Source: Dimorphilus gyrociliatus (Eukaryota; Animalia; Annelida). From it: 64,000 nucleotides of DNA. A program made the translations under genes and the position numbers. Below, piece by piece: positions 17,323-60,612 of the stretch. The stretch is from assembly GCA_904063045.1 (NCBI GenBank), contig CAJFCJ010000015.1, positions 62,001 through 126,000 on the forward strand, given 5' to 3'. Every line of letters begins with the position of its first letter. Positions within the stretch are counted from its first letter, which is position 1. The notes under the pieces are model-generated. The model ran no database searches and was not told the origin of the DNA. It saw only the letters and a list, made by a program, of their open reading frames with translations.

Positions 17323-18445
17323 CTATAAGGATAATTTTGAAAAAGCTTCAAGATTAGCTTCAAAATTGTCATCATTTAAACCTCCCTTCAATTGTGGAGT
17401 TTGATACACGTATTTTACGTATTCAGGGCATTTAGAATGGCTTTGCTTTGAAAGTCTGTCCAATTGATTGCTTTCATTGATAAATTCAATTATACTTCTT
17501 AACCGATCAAGGTAACTCTTTCCATAAGTTTTCTTCAAGTATTCATGTATAGCTATGGTTACTTGATCTTGGCCCGCTTTTAATTGAGGATACCTTTGTG
17601 ATGGTTTTAAAACTGTATAGGCCACGATGAGCATAGCTTCTTCTTGAGTAATTTGCAAGTTCATCATTCGCTTATAACTTTCTACTCTAAGATCTTCTCC
17701 TGTCTCTGGACTTAACTTTTCAATACATGCAAAATTGAGTTGCATTTGTTTCCCATTCAAGCACATTGTGAGTGTACCTGTCTCCGACACTGAGAGGGAC
17801 CGGTTTGCAGTATATATTAATACCATGTAATTCAAAGCGGGTACTGTTAGTGCGATAAGCTCTGCTTTCGAAAGATTTTCTGTTCCGGGCAGGCACTGTA
17901 CAAATGATACTAAATATCTCAAAGCCACTCTTAACAGTTCCTCCGACAGATTGATAAATGTTTTACGATTATCGGGTTCGATACCTGTAACAGAAACAAT
18001 GTCCATGTAGTCTTGAATACTGAAGAATTCAATTTCATTCATTTGATTTATCTCATCTATCATATTATCCAAATTAGAAATTTCTTCATGCCAATTAATA
18101 TTTTTTAGCTGTGAAAGACTTATGCGACATTGAGTTAAAACATCTTCAGTGATAGAGAATGATGGTGAATTAGGTAAATTGATTTTTCGACTAATTTCGT
18201 CACCATATATTAAACTTTCATTATATCTTTTTCTCTTTTTTGAATAACGACCAATCTTGATCTTATCCCGGGACATACCGGCCATCAGACACTTTTGAAA
18301 TCGGCAATATTTACAAAGGAACGCATAATCATTTTCAGGTATACAATCTTGTCTTCCAGTCCGACATTTATAATCTTGATGCTTCTTCTCTCCTCGACGA
18401 AAAAATACTTTACAACCTTCGCAGGTGTAACTTCCGTAGTGTAGG
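17323..18445 (-). CDS. NR1: nuclear receptor terminal cassette exon (second half of ZF1, ZF2, hinge, LBD); no own first exon found
   Basis: Acceptor ttttag|C CTA CAC TAC GGA. Reads LHYGSYTCEGCKVFFRR...CRTGRQDC...CKYCRFQKC..GMSRDKIKIGRYS then an open LBD (FVQCLPG) to the stop at 17323. The 311 bp upstream spacer has no CxxC..GG|GT exon. Confidence 0.9.
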
Positions 18446-18756
18446 CTAAAAAAATGTTTATCATGTAAAATATTATAAATGATTTAATAAATTTATATAA
18501 TAAAATATATATTGGAAAGATAGACGGTGGAAGAGAGAAGAAGAGAGAAAAGGGACAAAGGAGGTCCAAGGATTAGTTGATAAAAGATTGAATGAAAAGC
18601 ACATTAGAATAGAAATTAAATTTGAATTTTCCAACAGATTTACTTTTATTGCAAAATTTAAAATCTTCGTTATCTTATTCTGTTTGTTTTGTGTTTCTTT
18701 AGCTTTTTACAAAATGGCAACAATAATTATTGAATTATATATAAAAAGTTAAAGAG

Positions 18757-19882
18757 TTATTGAAGAGCATATTTTTGAAGGTCATCTAGAAGATTTTTAC
18801 TCTCCTCCACTTGACCAATATTATAAAGAAACTTCAATAGAACGCCTGGAAAAACGTAATTCAAGTATTTTTTATTCTGCTCATAAAACTTTTTTACTAG
18901 TCCATCAAATTGCTTAAAATAAGCGAGAAAATTAATGATGCTTTGGAGACGTATTACGAAAGAATTGCCATAAGTGCTCTGCATATAACGAGTAAATGCC
19001 AAAACTAAACGATTATGTGCAGCCATGGATTCTTTACATTTCTTTTGAGATGATACAAGATTAATGGCAAGGATTAGCATAGTTTCTTCCCAAGTGAGTT
19101 GTAAATTAAGGAATCGTTTATGATATTCTATATGGAAATCGGCTATTTCTTGATTGGATATTTGTATCATATGATTTCTGTCCAACCCTAATCGGTAATT
19201 TTGAAGGTTGAGGAAAAATTCTTCACCTTGCCATGTATATACCCCTAGAACAGCAAATGTTAAATGTACAATATTGATTGAAGATAGGATATTGAATAAA
19301 ATTTCGGCCTCTCTCAAATTCATCATTCCTGGTAGTTGTCTAGCAAAGGGGAATACATTTTTTATTGCAACTTTAAAGAAATTCTCAATTAAGATTGAAG
19401 AATGCTTTCTCTCATCGGCTTCGACTCCGGTTACTTCTAGAATATCCATGTAATCATGATTAGATAGTCTTGCGTCCTGTGCTTGTAAAGCTAAATTAAA
19501 GCCTGAATGAAAGTTTTCGATTTCCGAAGTCCATTGAATATTTCGCATGTGATTAAATGCGATAGAGCATAAAACTAGAAGATCATCAGCGTCTGAGTAA
19601 ACAGGTAATTTAGGGATATGAAATTTAATTTGTCTTAATTCTGCTAATTGTTTCATATTTTCTAAACGTCTTTCCCTGGAATATGGACCGATTTTAATTG
19701 CTCCTTTGGACATTCCGACTGACAAACACTTGGAATATCTACAAAAACGGCACAGGAATGTGTAATCGTTTGCAGGTGTACATCGTTTCTTCCCATTACG
19801 ACACGTATACTGTTGATGCCTATGTTCACTTCGCCGGAAGAAAACTTTACAAGCTTCGCAGGTATTTGCTCCATAATGATAA
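18757..19882 (-). CDS. NR2: nuclear receptor terminal cassette exon; no own first exon found
   Basis: Acceptor tttag|T TAT CAT TAT GGA. YHYGANTCEACKVFFRRS...GMSKGAIKIGPYS, LBD FARQLPGM, frame intact. AATAAA at 18650-18645. The 2.6 kb upstream spacer has no CxxC exon. Confidence 0.9.
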
Positions 19883-21532
19883 CTAAAAATACAATGGATC
19901 TAAGAGATTTTTATAACTATCGAGTATAGTTTTTTCGCAACTAGGGTAATTTAAGCAGGTAGAATCTCTTATCTTTCATCATCAAACTTATTTCTCAGGC
20001 TGAAAATCAACAAAAGCAAACAAACAAAATTTTTTTGTCTTTTCATTTTATTCTTTCTCCTTATTCCTTGCTTTTAATTATAAAAAATCATATAAATAAA
20101 TATGTCTTTTTCTTTAATAAAAAAAATGAATAAATATCTCAACTAATTAAAAACTTATTAATATTCAGATTATTCATTTTTTTTGCTTGAAATAACGAAT
20201 AAAAAGAAAGAAAAGTTTGTTTGTATTTTTTACTGAGCTTCAATTATTATGTCTCTCTTTTTAATTTGTCGAGTTATGATCAAATAATCATATAAGTAAA
20301 AAAAATGGACGATTTATTAATAAAATTCGTATTCCAAATACGCTTATATAAATCATACTAAAAATTAACAGTCTCTTGACTCGTAATGGATCCCATTAGA
20401 TTTTTATTAATGGATAAGTTATTCACATAAAAGTTAATTGAGAATTTATCTTAATCGAATATAGACCGTTTCAGAGTAAAGTCCTGGTTTAAATGGATGA
20501 GCATTTGTCAATTAAAATCTCAAGAGAATCTCTAAATCATTTAAATTATTCAATCTAAAGACATCAGTTTTTTATTTATTTATAAGAAAGTAGTAGTAAT
20601 TTTATTTGTTCTTTTTAAAGTTATCTTTATGGTGATGAAATAAAAGTCCTAATTGTTTATATATTATCAACGTATACTATAATTTATTATTGTGTAGACT
20701 ACAAGAATATTATTTGCTCTTAACTATCTTATACATTGTTTATTGAACTCTTATTTCACTTTGAGAGCTATGGGGTTTTGCTTATCGTACAGCTACAATA
20801 AATTAGAGTTAACAACAAATTGCCCATACGTGATTAGCATCTGTAAAAATAAAGAGAACAAGGATAGCAATAAGTTGTCTCTAATAATTTGATAGGGCCT
20901 TTATTACTGTAATATTTCAGCTTGAGTGTTGTTTATATGCTTTTATAACCTTTTTCCCCCGCCGGAAAACTCCATTTAAGATAAATAATTGAACGATACA
21001 CACAGTTTTACACGGAAATTGAAAATTCAATGTTGAATTACAAATGATCCTTTCCGGTTCTATAATCGAATATTCATTAAATTTTTTATTGATATAGACA
21101 AATTGAAGAATGCAGAGCTTTTAAAGAAATATATTCTTTGTCAAACGAAGACGCTTTAATTCTATATTCCTTCTAATACATTATTAGCGAAATTAATTAC
21201 TAGTAATTGTATAATTGATCTTCTCTTGAGACAATTCGAGTGGGAGTAAAAAAAATATGTGCACAAAGAAGGAAGACGTTCAAGGTTATACAAGCGAGTT
21301 TTCTTGGAATTTTAGTTCAATGTTAGACTATATTGTTCCATCGGATAATACAATAGTATTATCAATGACTTGCCACGCTGTCTAACTTATCATCCTAAGC
21401 CACATGACAGCTCTCATAGTTCTTCAATAACGTTTTTAAGAAGCATTTAACATGTGGGAAAAGACACTCTAAGTAATTTTTGTATTATGATGTTAACAAA
21501 ACAGTATAGGTGTTTTAATGATTGATATGCAG

Positions 21533-21563: not shown

Positions 21564-22455
21564 CATTATCTTTACGTGGAAATATCCTTTGGAATAGGCT
21601 TCAATTAGTGCTATTAATTATTACATATAACAAATGAATAGCTTACAATAGGAATACCGTAACTCTTTCCCATTTTAGAAACGCAAACGCAGTAGTTTTA
21701 ATCCTTTTTCCCTTCGCACAATGAGAAAGAAACTTAACGAGATTCTCATTAAAGTTATCAACGTTTTTAAGGAAAGAATAAAGGGAAAGTGAAAACTTTG
21801 TTCTCTTACAATTGAACATTCCCATTCCATCAGAGTGTCTACTGTGACAAAGAGCAAGTGCTGAGAAGTAAATATATTTTGTATTGTAGTTTTCAATGAA
21901 CTTTTTCCTTACTTATCACACAAATGGTGTATCACTATATACTATACAGTATATATTAGTATATAGATATAGCATATATATTGACTTTTCAATAGATAAA
22001 CTTGCTTTATTCTTTACTCACAGATGAAGCATTCCGATTGAATTCCACCCAATAAACTTTTCACCCCACTTTACAAACAATACCTTATTATCAAATTAAG
22101 CCTAGTCACGTCAAAACTATCTGTATAATCCGTCCCTAGTTATACGTATTTTCATTCAATAAAGACTCAATAGCTGCTAATTCGTAGAATATATTAATTA
22201 TATTTTAGAAATTCATATAATAACAATATAGGTAATCAACGAATTATACGGTTGATTTATCATAAATTCATTAATTAGAATTAAGTCAACTAATTAACTG
22301 CTGTTTCAAATTCAAGAGACAGACAGCAAAAGTACATAGAATAAAATGTTGTACGTTAACCACAAAATCTATCTTTCTCCACTTTTAGCTTCGTAAAAGA
22401 AGAAAATAATCGAAGAAAATGACATTAATTAAACGAAATAACAAAACTAAATAAA

Positions 22456-23569
22456 TCAAAACAATTTTAACTTTTCAATACTTGCAATATTCTCTTCATA
22501 ATCACCGAGACGGTACATACTTTTAAATACTGGATTTTTAACCGTTTTACTTAAATATTCTCCATATTTTTGATATTCTTTAACAATAGCTCTCTGAAAT
22601 TCGGCTGATCTTACAAAGAAAGATAGCAATTGTTGCCATCTTAATATTGACGATTTATTATATTTATTTTCTAAATAGTTGGATAATTCTACAAGTATTT
22701 TTTTATAATAATATGCTAATATTGGTGATTTACGACTTTTAAAAAAGTTTAATGAACAAATAAGAACAATTTCTTCTCTTGTGAAATTGATTTCTTCAAA
22801 ATCTTTTGCAAATTGTTTTAGTTTTTCAAATGTAATAACAGTTGATACACTTTCTATTAATTCAGTATTAACTGTTATGTTAGTATCGCATAAATGTACA
22901 TTATATTTTTTATCGAACCAATCTTTAAGAATATTTAAATGTAGGAATAAATAAATAAGAGTTACACCAGGTACAAATCTTGTTATCTTTTCTCGTTCGC
23001 TTAATTTATCAATTCCAGGTAGATTATTTAAACAATTTGCAAACAATTGTATATAGTGAAAGAAATAGTTTTCAGAAGCTTTAAAAATTTGTGCCCTACA
23101 ATCTAATTCAACACCTGTTACCTCCCAAACGTTCACAAATTCTTCGAGTGATACAAAGTTATCTTGAGGCATTTCTGCCGCGCTAGCATCAATTTGAATA
23201 CTGAACGAAGTTACAGAAGATAAAACTAATAACGGAGAAAAGGCATTCATACATATACTTAGAATATCATCCGCTTTTAGGAATGGAGAATATAGACATC
23301 CACGATCATTTAATTTATTAGAATTACCTACAATATTCAATTTTACAATTTCATTATGTTTTATTCTAGTATAACGTCCGTATCTAGTACGATATCTGGA
23401 CATTCCTATCCTAAGGCATTTGTTATATCGACACTTTCTGCAAACAAAGCCGTTAAGACCCGGATAGCAGTTATCTTTTCCGGATTTACAATTTAAATCC
23501 TGTATCTTATTCTTGTAACGACTGAAGAACACTTTACAGGCTTCACAAGTATATGCTCCAAAGTGAAAG
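22456..23569 (-). CDS. NR3: nuclear receptor terminal cassette exon; no own first exon (127 bp spacer)
   Basis: Acceptor ttctag|C TTT CAC TTT GGA. FHFGAYTCEACKVFFSR...GMSRYRTRYGRYT, LBD open to the stop. Only 127 bp separate the NR4 stop from this acceptor. Confidence 0.9.
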
Positions 23570-23696
23570 CTAGAAACAAAGATTAAACGGTATTTAACAA
23601 TTGTCTCTGTTTTTTTTTTTACTTTCAAATGTGATTGAGTGAGGGAAAAAAGAAAAAAAAAGCATACATTTAGTAGGTTACATAGTAATTTTATTT

Positions 23697-24822
23697 TTAT
23701 AGCTTTAATGCTTTGATACTACGAAGATTCTCTTCCATATCACCAACTCTGTACAAGGTTTTTACAATTGGACTTTGGTATACGTAAGAAAAGTATTTCT
23801 GATTTTTTCGTAACATTTTATAATGATTCATAGAGAATTCTCTCATATATGCCAAAGTATTTACGACGCTTCTCATTCTTTCCAAATAGCGATGCTGATA
23901 TGTCATCTGCATATATCTAGTGAAAGCTTTATGTATGCGTTTTTGTGCGTTTATTAATTGCGGATATTTCTTTTCAGGTGATACTAAGCTTAAAGCGAAA
24001 AGTAGTAAGATTTCTTCAAGGGTTAAATCTAAACTAACTAGCCTAAAATGGTAGTCCTTTAACGATTCTACATGTTCCTCATCGGATAGAGGAATTAAAC
24101 CTCGATAGTTCATTTGTAACTTTTTTCCCTCAACGTTAACAACGAAATATTCACCCTCGAATGAATGCATCATTTCCGTTGTTAACGCTAAATGAAGAAG
24201 AGACGTACATGACAATAGTCTACACAAAACTTCCGACGAATTCATATCATTTAAACCTGGTAACTGTTTAGCAAAAGGTAAAATGTTTAAAAGTACAACT
24301 TCCATAAAGTTTTCGATAACACTAATAAAACTCTTTCTATTATCTACTTCAAATCCAGTAGTTTCCAAAATTTTAGTATAATCCTTTAAAGAGAATAAAC
24401 CTTGCTCCATCATGTGAATTGCTCTTTCCATTTCTCCGTGTAAATTTTGAATTTCTTTAGTCCATCTAACACTCCTTATATTAAGGAATGTATTACAAGA
24501 TCTCATTAAAATGTCATCAGCGTCTGTATTGCTAAATAGATAAGGCGTACTTATAACGTTAGAACTATTCTCTCTTATTTTATGATATAATATTTTGTGT
24601 TTTCTTCTTCTATCATTTGTATAACGGCCCATTTTTATTTTTTCCTGTGACATACCAATCTTTATACACTTTGCAAATCTGCAATATTTGCAGGTGTAAA
24701 TAAATGTATTAGTAGGTTTGCATTGGCGTTTTCCATCGCTGCATTTATAATGTTGCTTCTTATCCTTATTACGATGAAAGAAAATCTTGCATGCTTCGCA
24801 CGTATATGCTCCATAGTGAAAA
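23697..24822 (-). CDS. NR4: nuclear receptor terminal cassette exon; no own first exon found
   Basis: Acceptor ccttatag|T TTT CAC TAT GGA. FHYGAYTCEACKIFFHR...GMSQEKIKMGRYT, FAKQLPGL. AATAAA immediately after the stop (23695-23690). Confidence 0.9.
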
Positions 24823-25316
24823 CTATAAGGAAATATATAAACTGTAGTCTATTTTAATTCATCACATCGATCATAATCATTCAAGCTGCCAATTACATCC
24901 TAAGATAAAATGCTTCGAACGTGCTTATAAACAGGTAAATAAATGTCCATATATATATACTGTATATATGTATATAAATGGATATTTATAAACGAAATTG
25001 AATTTCTAGAAATTCGCTATCCTAAAGTTTCCTGTTCTTGTAAAAAAAAAAAGATAAGTATCCATGGTAATAATAATATTTTCATTGATTTTTCCTGGAA
25101 TTGAAACAACAGAGAAAGAGAGAGAAGTGTAAAAAAATATACATATAAATGCATATTATTACTTTCGCTTTGAGTTTTGTTTTTGTTATTTTTTAAATTA
25201 TAATTCGACAGGAACAACAATAAAAAGAGAACAAATAGAATGAATAGAGTCCACATAAAAGTGAATATATTGAGATGATAATACACTGTTATAGTTTATC
25301 AATGTAAAAAGTATTA

Positions 25317-26478
25317 TTAGTATAGTTTATTTTTCTTTGATAAAAGTTCAGCAAAGCCTTGGCAATTTTGTTCTATTTCTACCATAGCGTATGATGTTTG
25401 TTTTGATTGATCGTTAAACCAAAGAGAAACGAAAAATTTACTTTCGTACAAGTGCATTAAATAATTTTCATCCTTTTTTGCTTTCTTTGTTACGAATAAT
25501 GTTTCCTTCATTGATCCCATATAGCTTACTATTTTATGTATTCTTTTATGATAATCTTTACCATAGGTAGATTCTAAATATCTCGTAAAACTTAACAACA
25601 ATCGATTGTAGGCGGATTGAAATTTTGGAAATTTGTTCTTATCCGATAGAAGAGTTATTGTTAGAACGTAGAAAATCTCTTCTAGAGTTAGATTAAGTGG
25701 AAATGTACAACCGGTTATTACTTTTAGAAAATGCGATAAAGGTTCCCCGTGAATATCTGTAATATTTTCCCAGCTTAACGGTAGTGACCTATTGTTAACT
25801 TTTAAAACAAATGTATCATTTTCCCAATAGCTTTGAGACAAGGCCATTATAGCCATACAAATGACATCGTAATTCTTGACAAGGTTATTTATAAATTCTA
25901 ATGGTTCTATTTCACTTAAACCGGGTAGTTTCACCAAAAAGCTTATAATTTGGGTGAATACTATTTTTAGAAGCCTCTCGATGAAAGATGACAATGCTTT
26001 TCTGTTATCGATAGCCAGGCCAAGCGTTTCAAACACATCCATATACACTTGCCGGTCAAAGAGGCCCGTTTCAGCAACACTTGCCGCTTCGTTAAAGATC
26101 ATATCGAAATTTTCAATTTTATTTGACCAAATAAGATTTCTTATTTCATAAAAAGTACTCGCACCGAATACGACAAAATCATCCGCGTCTGAATAAGGTA
26201 AAAGATGGGGTGTGGCTAATTTTCTCTTTTGCATTTCAGCAACTAATAGCCTATTTTTTAATTTCCTTACGATGGTATATGGTCCGTGCCTTATAGCGTC
26301 ACGAGACATTCCGACTTTCAAACATTTAACGTATCTACACAGTTTGCAAGGGTAAACACATTTGTCAGATGGAAGACAATTCATTCTACCCGTTCGACAA
26401 GTGTATTTCTTATGTTTTTCCCAGCTCCTTCGGAAGAAGACTTTACATGCTTCGCAAGTGTAGACTCCGTAATGCAAG
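25317..26478 (-). CDS. NR5: nuclear receptor terminal cassette exon; no own first exon found
   Basis: Acceptor tattcag|C TTG CAT TAC GGA. LHYGVYTCEACKVFFRRS...GMSRDAIRHGPYT, FLVKLPGL. Upstream spacer is 345 bp. Confidence 0.9.
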
Positions 26479-26823
26479 CTGAATAGAAACGTAACAGATT
26501 CGATCTTATTAACTGTATCCATAACGGAGAATACTTAAACAAAGCGAAGCGCGACAAAACAAAACCAACATACCACCAAAAAATCTTTGAACGCCAAAAG
26601 CGGAACTCACTAAAGCAATATTCCAATCGTATTTGAAGAAATAGATAGAACAGAGGGATTTTAATTAGGAATGCAAACAATTTCATTGTATTATTCTTTC
26701 TCTACATAATTATGATAAGTTAATACTATAACAATTTTGTTAGAAAAGAAACAGATTTCTATGTTAGCATAGGAGTATATTCTGTATGCAGCATATATTT
26801 TTATAAAGCTCTTTCATTACCCG

Positions 26824-27943
26824 CTAATTTTGTGGAATGTGAACAGACGTAATATTTCTTAAGTGATCCTCCAGATTACCTAATCCATAAACAGCTTTTA
26901 CAAGTGGTTTTCTATATACCAAATTGTAATATTTCAGACCGTTCCTGCTCCCTCCTGATCTAATAAATGGACATTGACTATAATGAGACATCAAAGCTAT
27001 TATAGCCTGAAATTTTCTTATATAATCTCTTCCGTAAGTAGTCGTTAAGTAGCGAGTGAATGCTGACACCATCCGTTTATAATGATAATTTAAAACAGGT
27101 ATACCCCTTTGGGGTGATAAAAGATTTAGTGCGCATACAAACGAAAACTCTTCATCTGTTAATTTACACTCTTGCAACAGTACCTGACTTCTTCTTTTAA
27201 AATCTACTAGCCTTTCAGACATAACTGCTCGCGCTACTTCAATTCCAACAACAACTTTATGCCCATTTAAGTTGATAATCAAAAATTCATTTTCGAGTGC
27301 GCATATATTTTCCATACTCAAAACCAAATGTAAAAGACCTCCTGAACTAAGAAAGTCGCGAAAGAAATCCTTCCTTTTAACCTCCATCATACCTGGCAAT
27401 TGTTTGATAAATGGTAAAAGTTTCAGTAAAACTACTTCCAATAAATCTTCGATCAGTTGTAGCGCAATTCTTCTATCATCTACGTGCTTTCCAGTCCCCT
27501 CTAGCACTTGTACAAACGTATCTATACTATGAACTGGACTATAGATGCACTTTTGAATATTATACATAATCTCCTGAAGATTTGGCAGAGTATCAAACCA
27601 TTTAATTTGTCGTATTGAGTAAATATTATTGGAATTTCTAATTATTAAATCGTCGAGATCTGAATAAGCAGGTAATAACGAAATAGTAACTACATCTGGC
27701 GGCTGAAATTGTTTTTTATTCTTTTCTTTAATGATTTTTTGAGCATAACGTCCTCTAACAATTTTTTCTGTTGACATTCCAACTACTAGACATTTCCTAA
27801 GTCTACAACTCTTGCACAAAAATGTTGAATTTTCATTAGGTTGGCAAGTATTTTCTCCAATGATACATTTAAAATGATCCTTCTTCCGACAACGTCGAAA
27901 AAATAGTTTGCAAGCTTCACAGGTAACGGCTCCGAAGTGAAAG
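26824..27943 (-). CDS. NR6: nuclear receptor terminal cassette exon; no own first exon found
   Basis: Acceptor tttatag|C TTT CAC TTC GGA. FHFGAVTCEACKLFFRR...GMSTEKIVRGRYA, FIKQLPGM. The 924 bp spacer has no CxxC exon. Confidence 0.9.
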
Positions 27944-28867
27944 CTATAAAACATACATTAGAGTACTCCTAACTTTTTATTTTACAAATTAAATGTTATT
28001 TTCAAGACTATTTTATTATTTGCTATAATCAATCATACGATGATATGCTAAATATATAAATATATTAGTATATATGTCATCCTATAGTATTATAGAAAAT
28101 TAATAAATTATTAAAAAACAAGACATTTCATTACATTTTCTTTCCTTATCTATCGTTAAAAGAATAAATTGAATAGTCCTTGAATAATATAAGATTTGAT
28201 AACAGCGAAAAATAAGTGTTAAGGTCATTTGAAAATGTATATATACAGTAGATATACATATACTGTATATTACTATCTATGCATTTTTTATCGTATATCG
28301 TGTTAAATAATATTACGAATAAGCTTTTCATATATTTAATGTATTGATGAATATTGTTTTATAAAAGAGAAAGAAAGACTACTTATAGCAGGATAAATGG
28401 GTGATTGTCTTCTTAATAAACATAAAACAATTACTTGCCAATGCACATTGATTGTTAAAATTTCCATCTAAAAAAAGTAACCTAGAATTCAATATTCTTT
28501 TATAAAATGAATTCGCTATAAGTACAATTGATTTAATATATTTCTTCTACCTAAATAATCACCTAGTATTAAAAATTAGATATTATTAAATTTAATAAGT
28601 CTCTGCCTTTTTCATCATCTCTCCTATTTATATTAGTATGTTATCTGTTTCTTATGCAAATTATTAGAGAGTGAAAAATGATTTTTGAGAATATGAATCG
28701 AAAAAGATTTCAAGCAAATGTTTAATAGATTTAAGGTAGTAGTCAATAGCAACACCTCATGCCCAAAAAGCTTACAGTAGTGAGTGACCAACGGACATTG
28801 AAAAAGTAGTAAATTTAAGGATTTACAATAACAACAGAGTAATATATAACTCAGTGGATGGTCTTTT

Positions 28868-31160
28868 TTACATTCCTTCTAGATAATTATTTTTCTCGAA
28901 AAACATTGATGAATCTATTGACATTGATTTTAGAGCCTGATTAATTTGTTCAACTTCTTCGATTGTTCCCCCATGATATAAGAGCTTTAGAAAACAGTCA
29001 TTATTGTATATATGATCTATATACTCTTTATTATTGTTTATCCATTTGATTTCATTTAATTTACTTTCACTTGCAAAACTTAAAAAACTAACAATATCGG
29101 AAAGTCTTTTCTCGTATTTGTGACCATACTGCCTTTCCAAGTAGCGAGTAAAAGTTAAAGCAATCGTCTTGTAAATTGGTCCAAAGTGTGGAAATTTCGT
29201 ATTTGGTTTTACAAGACAAAATAGCAATATAATTACTGATTCTTCAAATGTTAGTGCTATATCTTTGTAACGATTAAGAAATTGTACTTCTTGTTCATAA
29301 GATTCTTGGTCAGAAAAATCTACATAACTTTCTTTATCCAAAACAAGTTGGGAACCCTCTGGGAATTCTAACACAAACTTATTGTTCATAAGCTTGCAGC
29401 GTTCGTTAGGAAAATATAACCAACCAAACTGATCATAGTGACTAAGAATATTTTTCCTGAAGCTATCTTCATCTAATTCAATCATACCAGGTAATGAACG
29501 TAACAAAGGAAGTACTGCTAGAAAGTTTTGCTTTGAAATTTCGTCCGATAATTGCATATATTGTTTTCTTCCATCTAATTCAACTCCTGTCACCTGCCAA
29601 ACATCCATATAGATATCTTTTGATACTGTTCCATTTGCAAGTATATTACTTGCTTCGCCGCAAATTTCTTTATAGCTTGGTGACCATTTTACTGATAACA
29701 GTTGAGAGAATGTAACGGTAAATTGATTAAGTAAATCGTCAGAATATGTGTGCCTTGGTAAAAAAGGTATAAAACTTTTCAAACGTTGATAATTAGCTCT
29801 CTTCTTCATATTTTCTTCATGTCTAACCTTTGAATAACGTCCAACTTTAATAGCAGATCTCGACATTCCAATTTCAATACATCTCTTATATCTACATGCT
29901 TTGCAGGCGAACAAAAAACGAAAATTTGGACTACATAATTTCCGTTCATTTTTACATTTATAACTTTCATGTAATTGTATACTTCGGTAGAAGAAGACTT
30001 TACAAGCTTCGCAAGTATCAGCTCCATAGTGATAGCTGTTAAATGATAAGTACTGTTCAGCACCCTACAAGTCTTTATTGATTTAAATTTTTTCAAATTT
30101 CTAATTTATTTACAATCATAAAATCCTAAAGATTTTTATATTGCTACGCCCTGTAATTGAGAGAACCGCCCTGTTCTCCTACTAGAAATAATTGATCACC
30201 GTTCTGCGAAAAAAATCGCTTTCAGCCAGGTAACCATACTTTTCTATTATTAATATCATTTCTTGAAATTTTATGTGATTATCGGTCAATGTATGCAACA
30301 ACTACAACTATTACACAATCACTTTTTCAGCTGAACGTAAGAAAGTATACGAATGCTAGCGATAAGAGTTATCTCATAATTTGGTTGTATTTAATACAGA
30401 AATAGAAGAGAAAAGTACAGAGAGGAGATAACAGATAAAAAGAAAGCCTATTAAACGTAAAAAGATATTTTTAAGTATTTCTTTTTCTGGAAGGACAATG
30501 TAAAGAAAAAAAAACAAGTTTTTTTTTATCAATTTTTGTTCTGGTGTTTTCTACAGATAAGATAATCATTAACCTTTCACCTTCTCTAAACAAGTGCCAC
30601 GAAAGAGAAAAAATAAGACAAATATAATGAAATCATTCAATAATATGTAGACAACAATAATTACAATATTGAAAAAATCAAGTGGTGAAAATCAGTTAGA
30701 AAGCAAAAGAGGTCTTTTTTTTCTGCTCTTGTCTAGTTTCATTCAATCTTATTATGGATACGGTTTTGAACGAATGTAACAATTTATTTATTTAACTTGG
30801 TCAATATGCTTTTTTTTTCTCTCTTAAGTTCTATCCATTTATCGAAAAATCTTCAATTCTCTGAACAATCTTTAACTTATACGATTAAAAAAAAAAAGAA
30901 TTTCGCGTAATATCGATAAATGGTATAGAATGGAAGATATCAAGGTTTTAAAAGGCTAATGGTACATACCCAGAAGAATTTCCTCCGCAAACTTGACAAG
31001 GAGGTAGAACAGTCTTCGTTTCGAGAGGCTCAATTTGTCTCACGCTATTCGAATCAGATGAGCTTACAGTAGAGCCTGGAGGTGAATCACTGTCATTGCT
31101 ATTTGCAATTTGATTAATGAAATCGGTCAAGTCATCATCTATGTAATTCAATTCATCCAT
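28868..31160 (-). CDS. NR7: complete nuclear receptor, ~452 aa. Exon 1 31160-30970, 934 nt intron, cassette 30035-28868. Exon 1 is the candidate shared first exon for NR1-NR7
   Basis: Acidic N-terminus MDELNYIDDDLTDF...LPPCQVCGGNSSG|YHYGADTCEACKVFFYRS, donor GG|GTATGT. Probable 5'UTR intron at 31292-31230. Confidence 0.92.
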
Positions 31161-32242
31161 TTTCGGTAGATCAACTGTACCAAAGTTTATTTACATTCAA
31201 TTATTGTCATTCAAAAATTCTACAAAGATCTGTTCAACGAAAAAAAAGGTCTTCAAGGCTTTAACTGGTTTCTATATGCGTCATAGTTTTACCTGTATAT
31301 CGTGGCGCCGCCTGTCGAATTGTTAACTCTGATAGTTTCGTATAAAGTTGATAAATTCATTATAAAGCACACCTAACGTACATATCTATGAAAGCGATGT
31401 TTAAAGAAATCAATAACTACATATAAATGATACATAACCTGTTATACACGTTTTAATTAGGCAATATATAAAGAGAAGGTATAAGAAAAGACTTTGGAAA
31501 AATTTTAAGCAAGAGTTCCCCTACCAATGACAACTTTATCATACAATAATTCTTAGATAAAGATAGTCAATTGGGGATATAGTGAGCCTCACCTGTATTT
31601 CTTTTCATATATTTACATACGGTTTTGATATGCTGTCTCCGAGTTCTAAGAATAATAACTAAACAATTTCAATAAAATCTTCTGGAATTACTAATAAATA
31701 ATAGATGAAGAAATTGATTAGTATCTATTCTATTTTATTATTGAGTTCCTAACCAATAATAAGTTATATATAAAATAAAATGCCTTTATACTGTATAATT
31801 TCAATTTCTATATAAGACAGCAACTAATGAATATATATATAAATACATATATATATATATATATTAAAGAAAAGATAAGGGAAAATAATAAAGTTTCTGA
31901 TAACATTTTATCAATTTATAAAAAAATAAAAAAACTAATCGTCCCGAAATAGAACTTAACGAATAAAAATATTCATAGATAAGATGAATACGTACCAATG
32001 ACGAAGCTATATACTCCCACACATTTCATGCATGCATGAATATGTGCGATATACAGTATATATATATATATATCTAATAAAAATAACCATATAAATTTAC
32101 CTCCTGCAACGGTTGATAACATAAAAATAAACAAGTAAAAACAGTTGACATAGCAAAAGAGTCATTTAATCTTTTGTACTAGAATTTAATAACAGAAAAC
32201 TAATATGAACAATAAGTTAAATATTGTCAATTTAAGTTTCTT

Positions 32243-33717
32243 TTACTTTATATACATTTCCTGTATTTTTTTAATATTACTCTCATAATCACCAATACCA
32301 TGTGATGCTTTGACTAGAGGATTTGTATAAATAGTATCCAGAAATTGGTTATATTTATACATATATTTTCTTGGAACTGAATTAAGTTGTGTTAAAAAGG
32401 CTACTAGATTTATAATTTCTTGCATTCTCTTGGTTGAATCTCTCCCATAGTTCGTGTCCAAATATCTTGAGAAAGCTAGAGTCATGCGATTAGAAGCTGT
32501 TTTTAAAATTCCATTGTGACTATTGCATATTGCCAATAAGTGAAGAGAACAAACAAACATAACTTCTTCATGCTTTAAATTAGCTTGAATAATTCTATTG
32601 TGACATAATTTTTGCAGTCTTACATTGTCCTTTCCCAATGTGTTTTCTAGGCTATGTAATGGATGACGGGTAGAAAAACCATTATAAGTAACTACAAGGT
32701 TGTCATCTTCAAAACCTAATATATTTTGGCTAGTTACAGCAATATGAATTAAAGCTGCAGTCATAAGAAACAGCCTCCAGAAGCTTTCCCCTTGTAGTTC
32801 ACACATTCCAGGTAATTTACTCACAAATTTGTAATAATCTGTTAAAATTATCTTAAGGAACTGTTCATTGTGTTTTAAATAGACTCTCCTATCATCCAAC
32901 TCTTTACCAGTAGCATGCCAAACTTCTATAAACTCTTCAAAAGAAATAGTATAGTCATATTCAGATGGGCTTGTTTTCTTTGCGGGGCAAATTACTTCAG
33001 ACCAATCTAGATTTTTAAATTCACAGAAATTGTTTGAACACATAATTATAAGGTCATCAGCATCCGAATGCGAAGATAATAATTGTATCTTTGATACGGA
33101 TTTGCTTGAATTATTTAATTTTTCCAATTGTGAAGCTCTAATTTTTGATTGACGACCCATTTGAACTGCTTTTTTTGACATTCCAATATCTAAACAACGT
33201 TTTAATCGGCAATATTTACAATTAAATGTAAAATTTACACCTGGACAGCAAGTTTTTCGACCGCTCAGACACTTAAATGTACCCATTTTCTGATTATTTC
33301 GAAAATAAAATATTTTGCAGGCTCTACAAGTGTATGCTCCATAATGATATCTAATAAAAAGAAAACATAGTAGTAGATAATCGTATCTTGAATCTTTAAA
33401 AATTGTTTATGCAAAGTAAATTACGGCGTTGTTAAGAATGTTTAAATGAACAAGTTTTATTTAAAAAATCGGTAATAGCAAAGAATGTTTTGCATCTTGA
33501 ATAAAGGTGTTAAAAGATAACATAGTTACATAGTACTATATGCATACCCTGTTGATTTTGCTCCACAAACCTGGCAATTCGGTAAATTTTTGTCATTTTC
33601 CGGTTCATCTATTGGGACATCAGCAAAAAATTCATCGGGACTGCGATCATCATCACATATCTTTGTTACAAAGTCCATAAAATCTATATTCAAGTCTTTG
33701 AAATTATCTGCAGACAT
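32243..33717 (-). CDS. NR8: nuclear receptor. Exons 33717-33548 and 33350-32243; unusual P-box CRACK
   Basis: CQVCGAKSTG|YHYGAYTCRACKIFYFR; 197 nt phase-2 intron; LBD open. Confidence 0.92.
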
Positions 33718-34211
33718 TCTTTCAGGAATATTTGAAGCTATTTTCCAATATATCTTTGACTATTACAATACTATTTAGTATAGCAAAAGGTTAGTGAACC
33801 CTAATAAGTTGGATAGGTGGAGCTGCGTTAGTGTAATAGGATAGCAGAAAATATCCGCCAAATTTATTGTTTTTTATTAGAAAATAAAAAGTCAAACTTC
33901 ATTAATTTATAAATAACGTCTTATATAAAAGTGAATTGAACAGTAATATATCAATTTAAGAATGTCGAGTTCAATCAAATTTAACTTTTAATATTTCCTT
34001 ACTGATCTTTTTTCAAATTAAATCCTTCTATTTCAAATGTTACGTCATTATTCTTTAGTTAGAGAATACCTCAGAAAAGAATCAATAATTAAAAACTAAA
34101 TATAGATTTCTATTTTCATAATATATAGTGAGTCATTGACGTTGAGTATACTGTACAGTATTGTACAAAAAGTACATTCCCATTTCGGTTTATTCAGTAA
34201 TGAAACAACAA

Positions 34212-35587
34212 TTAATAAGATTTATTATGTAGAATATCAGAGATAAGTTCCATTTTTTCATCAATTTCGTTACTTAATCCACCATAAATAATTCTAAACA
34301 TTGGTGTCTTATATACCCAAGAGAAATAATCTTTATAACATTCTCTCCATTTATTGTATATAAGTCTTTTCTCTGACAAAAAGCTTAAAAAGTTTATGTA
34401 ATCCGCTAATTTTAAATGATAAGAATCTCCATATATTCTTTGAAGGTATCGTGTAAGTGCCATAACAAATCTATTATACGTCTGAGGTGAATATTTAAAA
34501 TCTTTTACTGGCATTGAGAGACTCATTGCGAAAATTAATAATAACTCTTCCCTATTTAGGTTCATTTCATCTTTACGGTTTATAGCCTCGATTCTTTTAT
34601 CGACTAGATTGTTCCCTAGCCATAATTTAAGGGTTTCACGAGAGAGCTTTACGGAACCATTTCCTAGAAAAATTTCTATACCATTTGAATTTCTATAAAC
34701 TGGTGCTATCAAATTGACCAAACAAAAATCGTATTCGTGATAACATAAGAGTTTTATAAAGTCTTTGTCAGATATCTCTCTCAAACCTGGCAAACCTTTT
34801 AACAGAGGTAAATAATTTTGTACGCCAAGTTCAAATATCTCACAGTGTTTTCCTGTAAATTCTGCCCGATCATCCATCTCTATACCTGTTACTTGATGTA
34901 TATCTATAAAATCATCCATGGAGACGAATGTTTTGTTGGATAATAAATTTAAATATTTTATTTGCTCATCGAATTTATCAATTTTTCTAGTCCAATTACT
35001 TTGAAGAATATTATTCAAAATAGAGAAACAACTTGAAATAATATCATCAGCGTCAGAATAAACTGGCAATAGTTCTGCTGAACATTTTGATTTAATATTG
35101 GATATTCTTTTTAGTTTCTCTGCATTCGTCTTTTTTGAATGTCTTCCTACTTTTATTCTTGTTTTTGACATTCCTTCACTAATACATTTTTGATATCTGC
35201 ATAATTGGCAATTGAATGAATAAGATAAGGAAGGAGCGCATTGATTTCTGTCGGTTTTACATTTGTAATTTTGATATTTAGTAATACTTCTTCTAAAGAA
35301 AATTTTACAGGCTTCGCAAGTGTAGATTCCGTAGTGTATGCTTCAATTTGAAAAAAAAAATACAATCTTTAAATAGACAGCAATCTTGTGTCAATGAATA
35401 ATATCTCTATATATATAGTAATAAAAATTTATACATATATATAGTATACTGTATATATATATAGAAAATGAGTTTGAATATGTTGGCCTATAATTGCTCA
35501 CCCATTCGATGGTCCTTGACAAACTTGACAAGGTAGAAATATATCTTCATTATAACCATTCCGTACTTCTTTTAGTTGTTCAGCCAT
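34212..35587 (-). CDS. NR9: nuclear receptor. Exons 35587-35502 and 35340-34212
   Basis: MAEQLKEV...LPCQVCQGPSNG|IHYGIYTCEACKIFFRRS; donor GG|GTGAGC. Exon 1 is absent from the ORF track because it is short. Confidence 0.9.
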
Positions 35588-36960
35588 TTTTATACCTTTA
35601 AATTAATTGTAAGTTATGAAAAATAAAAACAGTATATTATAAAATATTACGACCATACATAGGTGTCTCTACGGGAATTTTTATCTTCGTATTTATTTTC
35701 TAATCAATAGTTTATCGTTCTCAATCATTACATTTATAGTCTGACTGGAAATCTAATGTCAATATTTAGAATATGCACCACCCACAAGTTCTACATATTT
35801 AAATTTAATAAAATTGTGCTTTTTAAGTAATACAATTAGTTTCTTACTGTCAATCTACTAGATACTTTATAATAGCGGTTGAGTAGCTATCATTAAACTC
35901 AACTATTAGTATATCTAATGTAGTTAGTTAAAATATATTTTAATTAGATAATAAATTTAGTATCAAAATCAGCTAGACATGCCTTTTAGCAACTATATAG
36001 TAGAAGTCTCTTTCAGTACACTGCTTTATCAGCAAATTCTAGTTTATCGATATTTTACTTTGATTATTAACCAACATAAAATAGGTTTATGCAGACAAGC
36101 TACCAGTTTTCAGCATAAGGTTACTCACCTTACTTTAGGAGTTAATGACACGTACCTGTGACAACAGATGTCATCTCATTGGAAAAGTATTTTCGTACAA
36201 ATTTTAATTTGACTATGCTTTTCTTCAAAGTTACGCAATAAATATATTTTCACTTTTCTTAAATTTAGAAATATAGAACAGACTATTCAAATATTGAATA
36301 ACTATATAGATAGTTATACAGACTGCTATATTTCTTCCTCCGATCCGCCCTCTCTCAATATACTGTACGAGATAAAACTATCTTGACATTTATATTGTAA
36401 TATACCTTGTAGTCACACATATAATAAAAAAATTGATTGAAAATAAGTCTTATTGTTGCTGATTACGTCTTTTTCTCTTTTTTTGTCAAACAACTTTGTT
36501 CTTTCTCTTATAACTATTATTCTTTGAAAGAACACTATAAATGATTTTACCTAAGATCAAACGATAAACCTCGATTAACAAGAATTAGAATAACGTAATA
36601 TGAAAGAGAAATATTTTCCATCTCTTAAGTCTTACTATGTTTATGGAACATTGAAATTTTACACTTTTAGATTCCGTCTATTTTTGTCAAATTTTTCTTC
36701 TTCCATTATAGTTCAAAGTGTTGTTTTTTTTTGTCTTTTTCAAATATAAACCGGTATATTCCTTTATAATGTAAATGCTCAATTAAATTATACTTTAATA
36801 TATATACTATATATATATCTTTATCTGTTAGAAGGGAATGAACCAAACTGATCTATAGAACGATTGTTTTCACTATAGTCCTATAAGATATTCACCATTA
36901 AGAAATAGAAAACAAACGAACAATAAAGTTAGAACAATAAAAATCTCTTTTATAAATCTT

Positions 36961-38382
36961 CTATGGATTCTTTATGTACTGGGAAAGAACATCCATATTT
37001 TTGTCAATTTCGTTGCTAAAGCCAGCACAGAATATTCTTGAAAATGGTGTATCGAATACGTGTTCAAAACACGATCTATTATCCTCTCTCCAACGATTTG
37101 ATGATACTTTTAGTTCATTAAAGAATGATAGGAAACTAATCAATTCCGATAATCTATAATGATAAGAATCTCCATATGTTTTTTGCAAGTATCTTGTCAA
37201 GGCTTGAGAGACCCTATCATATGCTGATGGAAAATATGGATAATATTCATTAGGTGTAACCATATTAATAGAAAATATAAATAAAATCTCTTCATTTGTT
37301 AAATTTGCTTTTTCCATTTTTATAAATTTTTTGTGCCTCAAATCGGTCATAGAATTTCCAATCATTCGTTCTAAATTCTCATTACTTAAACAAATACTTT
37401 TATTATTTAGAGAGATATGTAAACCATCCCTCTGCCATTTCATACCAAATTCAAGAGAGATTATTAAATGAAAAGCATCTAAATGCGAACAAAGTATATG
37501 AAAGAAAACTCTATCATCAAGTTCAATCATTCCTGGTAATGCTTTTAAAAAAGGAAGCCAATATCTTCCTGATATTTCCATTAATTTTCCGTTAAATTTA
37601 GAGAATTCTTTTCTATTATCAATATGTAATCCAGTAACTTCGAGTATATTTGTAAAATCGTCTTTCAAGAAGAGGCCAGTCTCTATTATGTATTTCATTC
37701 TATCAAAAATTTCATTAAGGTCACTTACTCTTTCTGACCAATTGATATTTCTTAAGTCGTCAAGTAATATCGAAAATTTTGTTGTAATATCATCAGCATC
37801 TGTATATTTTAATAATAAAGGTACTACCTCTGAAGAATTTTCGCTTATATATAATTTTCTTAGAGCCTCCCTATTCTTTTGATGAATCTCTCTTGAATAT
37901 CGTCCAACTTTTATCCTTGTCTTAGACATACCTTCACTTTCGCATTTTTTATATCTACATAATTTACACGAAAATACAAATTTTTCATTCGGAGAACATT
38001 GGTTTTTATTCGTTAAGCAAGAGTAGCTTTGATTTTTCTTTACGCTCCTTTTAAAGAATATTTTACAAGCGTCACAAGTATTAGTACCATAGTGAAGGCT
38101 ATTTGTGTAGTACCAAAGAGAAAAAAAGACATAAGAAAGAAATAAGGTAGTTCGCTATTCAATGAATGAAATTACTTGTTAACAAGTAAATTAAACATAC
38201 CCTGTTGCGGTAGAACCGCAAATATTACACGGTGGCAAAATCGTTTTCTTCTCTTTGACAACTCTTTTCTTCTTAGGCTTATAAGACGATGCAAAGGTTG
38301 CTTTATTTCTAGAGTCACATGGTAACGAGAAATCAAAATCCTTATTATCAATTTCTAGGCTACTTAACAACTCCTTTTCCAT
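36961..38382 (-). CDS. NR10: nuclear receptor. Exons 38382-38201 and 38098-36961; P-box CDACK
   Basis: LPPCNICGSTATG|LHYGTNTCDACKIFFKRS; 102 nt intron. Confidence 0.92.
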
Positions 38383-38969
38383 TGTAGATATATATATATA
38401 TATTACAGAATAATTAATAAACTATAGGTGATTCTCCTAGAATTTATATGAGAATATTCTAGGATGGAAAACACACGCTTTCAATAGTCATAATTTTCAC
38501 TATAGATGTCTCTGTCAATATGTAAGACGCAGTTGATAAACTTATGAACATATAGTGTACATATGAAATGCATACATTAGTTTATTAATATTGTATATTA
38601 AATTTATCAAATTTCTAAATTTAACCTTGAATATAGTAGAAAGTTCACAGTACGATAAATATATTAACAAACGTACTCTGTTTAATCAAATTCTTTTCAA
38701 ATAGTAATAATAGTATAGGGGAAAAGTAAAAATGTTTCTTTAATTATCGTTCTATGTACATTCATTATTGAAGAACAGACGTATTTTTCAATATACTGTA
38801 TAGTGAGAGTAGATTATTCAAATTTAATATCAATAGTTAGTTTTTCTATTCCGCCGGTAAATTATTGTTAGCTGTGCTCTCATTTAATATTAAAATAAGA
38901 AACCAACGGACAACATAAAACAAGATGACTATTTACAACATGAATATTTTTGAATAGAAGTGTTTTAGT

Positions 38970-40314: not shown

Positions 40315-40555
40315 TATTCAAGACAATTCATGCTAAGAGACTAAAATGAATGTTTTGTTGGCAATTATCTATATCGGTCAGGTGTCGCTTCAGTATACTT
40401 TTATTTTCGTATCCTTTCAAGTGTTAAGTGCAACGTTAGGCTTATTTTATTTATAGTACAATTTTCTATTAACAATTGTTTATTTACATTTAAATAGAGT
40501 GTAAACATGTTGGATGTACAATTTGAATTGAGCATTATTTCTGTATGTCAATAAA

Positions 40556-43805: not shown

Positions 43806-43994
43806 TACGTAAACTAGCTAACTGTCAAAGATATTGTTATAATCCTTTAATTAATATTGAAAATGGTATCAGATTATATCAGCAGATATCGTGACTTCGT
43901 TTTAGATATCCTCTCTAAGATATAGCTCTTGTCGAAAAAGTTTATTTTCGTATTTATTTCAAATTAAATATTATAATATATTGTATTGATTTAT

Positions 43995-60585: not shown

Positions 60586-60612
60586 CACTTGGCATTCAAC
60601 ACTGCGACCGCG

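What the first reader, a model, noticed from the sequence alone, without database searches (positions are those of the whole stretch)
30737..30765. Candidate Dscam-like docking site in the NR7 intron with staggered complementary selectors in front of cassettes
Seen: + strand 30737-30750 (TTTCATTCAATCTT) is the exact reverse complement of 18584-18597 (AAGATTGAATGAAA), which lies ~140 nt upstream of the NR1 acceptor; pairing extends to 18 bp with one bulge (18580-18597 with 30737-30755). The adjacent 30752-30765 (TTATGGATACGGTT) is complementary at 13/14 positions to 26511-26524 (AACTGTATCCATAA), 33-46 nt upstream of the NR5 acceptor. The two pairings overlap on the docking side (30752-30755), so they would be mutually exclusive, as in the Dscam exon-6 docking/selector system. 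Weaker G-U-containing matches occur before NR3 (23579-23589) and NR4 (24895-24912, 25058-25065); none is convincing for NR2 or NR6. Caveats: the DNA is AT-rich, so one 14-mer alone could be chance. Also 26498-26510 resembles the docking region in direct orientation, so the NR5 match could be paralogous intron sequence with a 12 bp micro-inversion.
Basis: partly seen in the sequence, partly recalled or inferred. Interest (0 to 1): 0.75.

Follow-up and report, generated by a model that had tools for sequence, protein, structure and literature searches.

The report
Conserved intron element pairing with cassette leaders
In a worm gene that joins one first exon to any of seven complete hormone-receptor bodies, the proposed intron "docking" stretch is kept almost letter for letter in a related species and can still zip to a kept stretch in front of receptor body 5. 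It has matches for at most three of the six distant bodies, so an RNA switch is plausible but unproven.

Summary
The reported sequences are exactly as described (14/14 with the NR1 leader, 13/14 with the NR5 leader).

Searched over the whole intron and all spacers, a 14-mer is chance level (P 0.15 exact, 0.85 scored).

The segment is nevertheless the best-conserved island of the 5' kilobase of the intron in a related species. Its core of 27 nt differs at one position.

- **NR5 partner:** it lies in a conserved island, and the 13/14 duplex persists in both species (-16 to -18 kcal/mol; island-versus-island P 0.004-0.01).
- **NR4 partner:** it also lies in a conserved island, but the pairing is marginal (P about 0.05).
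- **NR1 partner:** it is absent from the relative.
- **NR6, NR3, NR2:** they have no partner, yet contigs of a public run join exon 1 to NR6 and to NR2.

There is no compensatory change. The docking element and the NR5 island also share a 14-mer in direct orientation, so a paralogous or shared-motif origin is an equally live rival.

Verdict: a real conserved intronic element, and a possible but unproven docking site for NR5 and perhaps NR4. It is not a general Dscam-like selector system.

This scan has noted similar conserved helices in other genes of this genome, and a 24-body receptor array on other DNA.

The parts
30970..31160 (-). Exon 1. It holds the ATG and the N-terminal 64 codons, ending in the first half of zinc finger I (C-x2-C-G-x4-G). 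The donor GG|GT is at 30969-30968.
   Evidence: ORF and donor. It is the only exon-1-like sequence between 17.3 and 31.2 kb. The X1 contig of exon 1 ends exactly at 30970.
30036..30969 (-). Intron between exon 1 and the first receptor body, NR7 (934 nt). It is at least 2.06 kb in the relative.
30739..30775 (-). Conserved docking-like element (DE). The 27-nt core at 30739-30765 differs from the relative at one position. The left half (30752-30765) is complementary to the NR5 island. The right half (30737-30755) is complementary to the NR1 spacer and, with a bulge, to the NR4 island.
   Evidence: blastn of window intron against relative intron gives its best hit here, E 4e-7. Coordinates. Duplex energies.
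30546..30587 (-). Second conserved intron island (D), used as an internal control. It has no above-chance complementarity to any spacer in either species.
26479..26575 (-). Conserved island S5, directly upstream of the NR5 acceptor (core 26486-26554). It holds the selector 26511-26524, a local 6-bp hairpin (26515-26534), and a direct copy of the DE right half (26498-26511).
   Evidence: Cross-species alignment. Hairpin and duplex. Direct and complementary statistics. Coordinates.
24856..24913 (-). Conserved island S4a, 33-90 nt upstream of the NR4 acceptor. Its 5' part (24897-24913) is complementary to DE with a 4-nt bulge. Its 3' part carries a sense copy of the motif shared with DE and S5.
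18580..18597 (-). NR1-spacer stretch complementary to the DE right half (14/14, or 18 with one bulge). It is not conserved in the relative.
28871..30035 (-). NR7 terminal exon (rest of the DBD, hinge and LBD, then a stop).
   Evidence: Pfam zf-C4.
26827..27943 (-). NR6 terminal exon. An X1 contig joins 30970 directly to 27943, and the skipped part has GT..AG ends.
25320..26478 (-). NR5 terminal exon.
23700..24822 (-). NR4 terminal exon.
22459..23569 (-). NR3 terminal exon.
18760..19882 (-). NR2 terminal exon. A 57-nt X1 contig joins exon 1 (30997-30970) to 19882-19854.
17326..18445 (-). NR1 terminal exon.

Best explanation
Window 30739-30775 (minus strand) is a conserved cis-element of the pre-mRNA, 204 nt downstream of the only donor of a gene with seven alternative terminal exons.

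Proposed mechanism (inferred, not shown):
- Its left half forms a long-range duplex with the conserved element 32-45 nt upstream of the NR5 acceptor. That duplex has a 10-bp perfect core, one mismatch and 3 more bp.
- Its right half, plus the AUCC of the left half, pairs more weakly with the conserved element upstream of the NR4 acceptor.
- The footprints overlap, so only one duplex can form at a time.
- Each duplex would loop out the proximal receptor bodies and bring a distal acceptor within about 250 nt of the donor. That would offset the first-come advantage of NR7 and NR6.
- In the NR5 island the selector can instead close a weak local hairpin with a DE-like arm. The choice may therefore be a competition between local and long-range pairing.

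The 14/14 match to the NR1 spacer is either lineage-specific or chance. NR6, NR3 and NR2 are chosen without such pairing.
For: Gene layout:
- 15 receptor-body exons share an acceptor in one phase.
- Only nine exon-1s exist, and there is none between NR7 and NR1.
- A public run holds contigs joining exon 1 to NR6 and to NR2.

Conservation:
- DE is the top conserved island in the first kilobase of an otherwise unalignable intron. It sits 204 nt from the donor in the window and 719 nt in the relative.
- S5 and S4a are the only strong islands near acceptors.

Pairing:
- DE-S5 is -16.4 and -17.8 kcal/mol in the two species. DE core against the S5 island gives P 0.004 and 0.011.
- The best-pairing 29-nt windows of the whole intron for the NR5 and NR1 spacers both fall inside DE.
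- DE-S4a is -13.9 and -13.6 kcal/mol at orthologous places (P about 0.04-0.06).
- The equally conserved control island D pairs with nothing above chance.
- The only substitution in the DE core faces the only substitution in the S5 arm. This is the mismatched pair in both species.

Precedent:
- Competing pairings govern 3' variable regions of PGRP-LC, CG42235 and Pip (PMC6191721).
- Partial duplication of intronic stem-loops is a proposed origin of docking/selector sets (PMC6071210).
Against: - There is no compensatory change. Both arms are simply invariant, so the pairing is not distinguished from conservation for another reason.
- The facing variable position is a mismatch in both species (C.A and U.U). 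It is equally explained by one degenerate position of a DNA motif present in two orientations.
- DE and S5 share a direct 14-mer as significant as the complementarity. S4a shares sense motifs too.
- Only one partner (NR5) is robust. NR4 is marginal, and ungapped scoring is not significant. NR1 is not conserved.
- NR6 and NR2 are spliced to exon 1 without any partner, while no exon 1-NR5 or exon 1-NR1 junction was seen in the one run available.
- Other, non-conserved windows of the intron reach similar summed energies.
- DE-derived 8- and 9-mers are not enriched in the spacers in either orientation.
- Only one related species was available.
Confidence: 0.42

Rival explanations
1. DE, S5 and S4a are conserved because they bind the same protein(s), or act as DNA-level enhancer or promoter elements. 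They share sequence modules because the cassettes and their upstream introns arose by tandem duplication. The complementarity is a by-product of one module lying in inverted orientation in S5, through a small inverted duplication or inversion. It has no role in splice choice.
For: - A direct 14-mer is shared by DE and S5 (P 0.003 in the window, 0.05 in the relative).
- S4a and S5 share a sense motif of about 10 nt, identical in the relative.
- S4a also has a sense copy of 8 nt of DE.
- The islands are invariant over 27-70 nt. That is more than a helix needs.
- The variable position common to the two inverted copies fits one degenerate motif position.
- NR6 and NR2 are used without partners.
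Against: - An inverted copy kept letter for letter next to an acceptor is what RNA helices look like.
- The control island D, equally conserved, shows no complementarity.
- Duplication of stem-loop arms is the proposed origin of true docking/selector sets (PMC6071210), so paralogy and pairing are not exclusive.
- No known factor was identified for the motif, and Rfam gives nothing.
Confidence: 0.33
2. The pairings are chance matches in AT-rich DNA. The overlap of the segment with a conserved island is coincidence.
For: - The whole-intron nulls are at chance level: exact 14-mer P 0.15, scored P 0.85.
- A direct-orientation 14-mer also exists.
- The NR1 partner is not conserved.
- Other intron windows pair as well by energy.
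Against: - DE is the best conserved island of the intron's 5' kilobase.
- The NR5 and NR4 partners also fall in the few conserved islands.
- Island-versus-island P is 0.004-0.01 in both species.
Confidence: 0.12
3. The distal cassettes are transcribed from their own promoters and trans-spliced to exon 1, as in mod(mdg4)/lola. On this view DE is an element of the common intron that promotes trans-splicing, and S5 and S4a are promoter-proximal elements.
For: - Conserved islands sit immediately upstream of two cassettes.
- A conserved element sits in the intron after the common exon.
- The analogy with Drosophila mod(mdg4)/lola rests on my own knowledge and was not tested here.
Against: - X1 contigs run uninterrupted from the NR6 exon through the spacer into the NR5 exon, and from exon 1 through the intron into NR7. 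This fits one long precursor, although contigs cannot prove single molecules.
- The NR3 spacer is only 130 nt.
- No promoter evidence was sought.
Confidence: 0.08

Closest known systems
Competing RNA pairings in 3' variable regions of Drosophila PGRP-LC, CG42235 and Pip (Pan et al. 2018, PMC6191721)
   Same: - Tandem 3' cassettes are spliced alternatively to one upstream donor.
- There are conserved intronic elements.
- One is reverse-complementary to elements at or near the cassette acceptors.
- The footprints overlap.
- Local pairing may compete with inter-intron pairing.
   Different: - Here each cassette is a single terminal exon encoding a whole receptor body.
- Only one partner is robust and one is marginal.
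- No covariation and no mutational test exist.
- The animal is an annelid, according to earlier notes of this scan, and I did not check that.
Dscam1 exon 6 docking site and selector sequences (Graveley 2005, as cited in PMC6191721 and PMC6071210)
   Same: - A docking element lies in the intron just downstream of the constitutive exon and is highly conserved.
- Selectors lie upstream of the variable exons.
- The pairings are mutually exclusive.
   Different: - In Dscam every variant has a selector and the variants are internal exons.
- Here three of the six distal cassettes have none.
- Exclusivity is already guaranteed because each cassette is a terminal exon with its own stop.
Origin of docking/selector sets by partial duplication of intronic stem-loops (Ivanov and Pervouchine 2018, PMC6071210)
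   Same: - S5 holds a local stem-loop whose 5' arm resembles the DE left half.
- DE and S5 also share a flanking direct repeat, as expected if one arm of a stem-loop was duplicated along with a cassette.
   Different: - Here two docking-like arms (DE and the local arm) would compete for one selector.
- The model describes several selectors competing for one docking site.
lola and mod(mdg4) of Drosophila: a common 5' part joined to many alternative 3' exons (own knowledge)
   Same: A constant N-terminal exon is joined to alternative C-terminal exons that each carry the DNA-binding specificity.
   Different: Those genes use trans-splicing for part of their isoforms. Nothing here shows trans-splicing, and the contigs suggest read-through precursors.

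Membership tests
Docking-site/selector competing RNA pairing (Dscam exon 6 and 3' variable-region type) | A cluster of alternative exons that all use one constitutive splice partner | tested here: met
   - Seven terminal exons share the acceptor phase, and there is one exon 1.
- Contigs join exon 1 to NR6 and to NR2. The junction sides are 21 and 28-29 letters, under the tool's 31-letter rule of thumb.
Docking-site/selector competing RNA pairing (Dscam exon 6 and 3' variable-region type) | One docking element in the intron next to the constitutive exon, conserved between species | tested here: met
   Window 30739-30775 matches L012 5970-6010. The 27-nt core has one difference, in an otherwise unalignable intron.
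Docking-site/selector competing RNA pairing (Dscam exon 6 and 3' variable-region type) | A selector complementary to the docking element upstream of each (or most) variable exons | tested here: not met
   - NR5 has one: yes in both species.
- NR4 is marginal.
- NR1 has one in the window only.
- NR6, NR3 and NR2 have none above shuffles or above other intron windows.
Docking-site/selector competing RNA pairing (Dscam exon 6 and 3' variable-region type) | Selector footprints overlap on the docking element, so pairings exclude each other | tested here: met
   - NR5 uses 30752-30765.
- NR1 uses 30737-30755.
- NR4 uses 30739-30751 and the AUCC within 30752-30765.
Docking-site/selector competing RNA pairing (Dscam exon 6 and 3' variable-region type) | Pairing kept in evolution, ideally with compensatory changes | tested here: inconclusive
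   - The DE-S5 duplex is kept (-16.4 and -17.8 kcal/mol) with no compensatory change.
- The single variable pair is mismatched in both species.
- Only one relative was available.
Docking-site/selector competing RNA pairing (Dscam exon 6 and 3' variable-region type) | Disrupting the duplex changes exon choice and restoring it rescues the choice | not testable with these tools
   This needs minigenes or in vivo editing.
mod(mdg4)/lola-type trans-splicing of alternative 3' exons | 3' exons transcribed from their own promoters and joined in trans | not testable with these tools
   The only run available is kept as contigs. Contigs that run through the spacers hint at read-through precursors but cannot show single molecules.

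The most novel reading that the evidence does not exclude
A bipartite, deeply conserved docking element in the first intron of a seven-tailed nuclear-receptor gene decides, by competing long-range RNA duplexes against local hairpins, which complete receptor body (DNA-reading helix plus ligand pocket) is attached to the common first half-finger. That would be an RNA-structure switch choosing between whole transcription factors, in an annelid.
Probability: 0.35. Interest if true: 0.7.

Novelty: new member of a known kind. Interest (0 to 1): 0.5.

Why it matters
If the duplex works, it gives a concrete, mutable handle of 27 nt on how one gene chooses among seven different nuclear receptors. It would also extend RNA-pairing control of 3' variable regions beyond the insect genes where it was proven.

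Even if the pairing is not functional, the three conserved islands (30739-30775, 26479-26575, 24856-24913) are the obvious places to look for whatever controls cassette choice in this unusual gene.

Tried and rejected
1. **RNAduplex of the whole intron against whole spacers with shuffles.** I replaced it with windowed duplexes and a diagonal score.
2. **An early wrong conclusion.** From the alignment with L006 I concluded that the docking segment was not conserved. The relative's assemblies break at a TA repeat inside the intron, and the ortholog lies on the exon-1 contigs.
3. **Conserved island D as an alternative docking site.** It has no complementarity above chance.
4. **Pairings among all conserved islands.** None was kept at orthologous places other than DE-S5 and DE-S4a.
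5. **DE as a microexon on either strand.** The splice-like flanks on the + strand of the window are not kept in the relative (read by eye).
6. **An in-frame ATG inside the NR5 selector as a start codon.** The frame is not kept in the relative.
7. **Rfam on 17-34 kb.** It found nothing.
8. **Ortholog search with the neighbouring gene at 32246-33286.** It found nothing.
9. **A third, distant species (L005).** It has no DE- or S5-like motif.
10. **The search of earlier findings by sequence.** It returned nothing.

Full report
**Observation**

- + strand 30737-30750 is the exact reverse complement of 18584-18597. The match extends to 18 positions with one bulge.
- The reverse complement of 30752-30765 matches 26511-26524 at 13 of 14 positions.
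- The two docking-side footprints overlap at 30752-30755.
- The direct-orientation resemblance of 26498-26511 to the docking region is also real.

**Setting**

The minus strand carries 15 long open exons of about 370-390 codons. Each starts inside zinc finger I of a nuclear receptor, four bases before the H of HYG, with an AG acceptor in the same phase. Each runs through the rest of the DNA-binding domain, the hinge and the ligand-binding domain to a stop (Pfam zf-C4).

- Nine short exons supply an ATG, an N-terminal tail and the first C-x2-C of the finger, ending in GG|GT.
- The eight upstream bodies each have their own such exon and are ordinary two-exon genes.
- The exon at 30970-31160 is followed by seven bodies (NR7 to NR1, 30035 down to 17326). 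There is no further exon 1 among them by regex, three-frame reading or tblastn. One spacer is only 130 nt.

The 'cassettes' are therefore alternative terminal exons, not internal mutually exclusive exons.

**RNA evidence**

The one public run that holds the region (X1) is kept as contigs and its kind is not on record.
- One contig joins 30970 directly to 27943, the NR6 acceptor. The 3,026 skipped bases have GT..AG ends on the minus strand.
- A 57-nt contig joins 30997-30970 to 19882-19854, the start of NR2. I checked this against the window.
- Another short contig carries exon 1 plus nine letters shared by NR6 and NR3.
- The junction sides are 21 and 28-29 letters. That is under the tool's 31-letter rule of thumb, so this is good but not perfect evidence.
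- Other contigs run unspliced from exon 1 through the intron into NR7, and from NR6 through the spacer into NR5. This fits long read-through precursors.
- No junction to NR7, NR5 or NR1 was visible in this run. Contigs show presence, not absence.

**Chance, first pass**

Against the whole 934-nt intron and all 4.8 kb of spacers, an exact 14-mer complement appears in 15% of dinucleotide shuffles. A scored match as good as the NR1 one appears in 85%. A direct-orientation 14-mer also occurs. On that basis alone the finding would be chance.

**Related species**

The word search with NR1 found a 54%-identical protein (P0002). Its Logan contigs carry the same array in the same order, NR7' to NR1', again without internal exon-1s. 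Introns and spacers are unalignable apart from a few islands:
- two islands in the NR7 intron (D at 30546-30587, and the last 90 nt);
- the last 95-170 nt before the NR5 acceptor (S5);
- 58 nt ending 33 nt before the NR4 acceptor (S4a);
- two blocks far up the NR2 spacer.

I first concluded that the docking segment was not conserved. That was wrong. All assemblies of the relative break at a TA repeat inside the intron, and the 5' part lies on other contigs. I reached those through the exon-1 peptide (P0041, 70% identical).

On them, 719 nt after the donor, lies the ortholog of 30739-30775. The 27-nt core differs at one position, and this is the best local match of the whole 5' kilobase (E 4e-7). 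I call this element DE.

**Chance, second pass**

With DE defined by conservation rather than by complementarity, the results change.
- **NR5:** the DE core against the S5 island gives -18.2 and -17.7 kcal/mol in the two species, with shuffle P 0.004 and 0.011. The ungapped score gives P 0.01 and 0.004. The trimmed duplex (10 perfect pairs, one mismatch, three pairs) is -16.4 and -17.8 kcal/mol.
- **NR4:** DE against S4a gives -14.5 and -13.2 kcal/mol at orthologous places (P about 0.04-0.06). Ungapped scoring is not significant.
- **NR1:** DE against the NR1 spacer is strong in the window (-21.1 kcal/mol, 0 of 300 shuffles). The relative has no counterpart, and the NR1 spacer has no conserved island.
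- **NR6, NR3, NR2:** nothing above chance in either species.
- **Control:** the equally conserved island D pairs with nothing above chance.
- In a sliding scan of the intron, the best 29-nt windows for the NR5 and NR1 spacers both fall in DE.
- With other intron windows as the null, DE is in the top 5%, 1.5% and 2% for NR5, NR4 and NR1. Two non-conserved, more GC-rich windows reach similar sums.

**What argues against a simple docking/selector reading**

- Both arms are invariant, so there is no covariation.
- The only substitution in the DE core (C in the window, T in the relative) faces the only substitution in the S5 arm (A versus T). That pair is mismatched in both species. This fits an internal loop free to vary. 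It fits equally one degenerate position of a DNA motif present in two orientations.
- DE and S5 share a direct 14-mer immediately next to the inverted part (13 of 14; P 0.003 and 0.05).
- S4a shares sense motifs with both, and its 10-nt sense motif is identical to that of S5 in the relative.
- S5 also contains a local 6-bp hairpin whose 5' arm resembles the DE left half.

The islands thus look like rearranged copies of one module. It is also what the stem-loop-duplication model for the birth of docking/selector sets predicts (PMC6071210). Paralogy therefore does not exclude pairing, but it removes the independence of the two arms.

DE-derived 8- and 9-mers are not enriched in the spacers in either orientation.

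**Mechanism proposed (inferred)**

- DE, 204 nt after the donor, pairs with S5 or, more weakly, with S4a.
- The footprints overlap, so one pairing excludes the other.
- The duplex loops out 4.2 to 5.9 kb holding the proximal bodies. It places the distal acceptor near the donor, in competition with the local S5 hairpin.
- This is the logic shown experimentally for PGRP-LC, CG42235 and Pip (PMC6191721).
- It cannot be the general selector of this gene. NR6 and NR2 are spliced to exon 1 without partners. Exclusivity needs no RNA structure here, since every body ends in its own stop and presumably its own 3' end.

**Membership and novelty**

The case meets the layout, docking-conservation and overlap criteria of the docking/selector family. 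It fails the 'selector for each variant' criterion, is inconclusive on covariation, and is untested functionally. I therefore file it as working like, and possibly being, a small member of the known kind. If real, it is a new member, not a new kind.

Earlier notes of this scan name the genome as Dimorphilus gyrociliatus. They also report a 24-body receptor array and several letter-for-letter conserved intron helices elsewhere in it. I did not verify the species name. I tested only the layout on this window.

**Limits**

- Only one relative was available, and all its samples are identical at the three islands.
- Only one run was available, and it is kept as contigs.

Noticed in passing
window 32234-47100, minus strand: Eight further receptor bodies lie upstream of the array. 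Each has its own exon 1 (last exon bases 47037, 45176, about 43701, 41768, 40199, 38201, 35502, 33548) and a short intron of roughly 60-200 nt. These are ordinary two-exon tandem genes. The U12 donor is GTTAAT.
   Followed up: partly
window 25431-27943 and 28140-30999 (run X1): One contig runs from the NR6 acceptor through the NR6 stop and the spacer into the NR5 exon. Another runs from exon 1 through the whole intron into NR7. The exon-1 contig has a mean word depth of 1148, against 240-390 for the bodies. This hints at read-through precursors and a shared first exon.
   Followed up: partly
window 30546-30587, minus strand: A second conserved intron island holds two TTATCT (GATA-like) motifs, TAATGA, and two 5'-splice-site-like AGGT stretches. 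It has no complementarity to any spacer. Its function is unknown.
   Followed up: partly
window 30805-30820 versus 23651-23666: A 16-nt perfect complement links the NR7 intron and the NR3 spacer. It is built on an A9/T9 run plus GCATA. It beats all 400 dinucleotide shuffles, but homopolymers inflate that figure. No matching island was found in the relative.
   Followed up: partly
window 30070-30081 versus 22156-22167: A 12-nt perfect complement links the conserved end of the NR7 intron and a conserved block of the NR2 spacer. The pairing is not kept in the relative.
   Followed up: partly
window 22057-22294 and 21245-21436: Two blocks of about 200 nt in the 2.6-kb NR2 spacer are about 65% conserved in the relative. 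They have no open frame and no Rfam match. They may be remains of a decayed cassette or another regulatory region.
   Followed up: partly
L006 2834-3170 and 7983-9115: In the relative the NR6 and NR3 orthologs each need a frameshift to be read through. They are possible pseudogenes, or assembly errors at homopolymers. These are also the bodies whose spacers show no conserved island.
   Followed up: partly
window 26520-26522: The ATG inside the NR5 selector is in frame with the NR5 body in the window, giving M-D-T-V-N-K... ahead of HYG. A 1-nt indel puts it out of frame in the relative, so it is unlikely to be a start codon.
   Followed up: yes
L005 1-4169: A third, distant organism (Logan ERR14224705) has three tandem receptor bodies of the same kind, with spacers of 190-310 nt and no exon 1 between them. 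The shared-first-exon layout may be widespread.
   Followed up: no
window 60589-63141 (+) and 12225-13139 (-): Two flanking open frames were seen: a NEK-like protein kinase in at least two exons, and a WD-repeat-like 304-codon frame.
   Followed up: no
window 28056 (run X1): A contig leaves the window sequence at 28056, in the NR7-NR6 spacer, and goes on for 255 unlike letters. It may be an allele with an indel, or a further joint.
   Followed up: no
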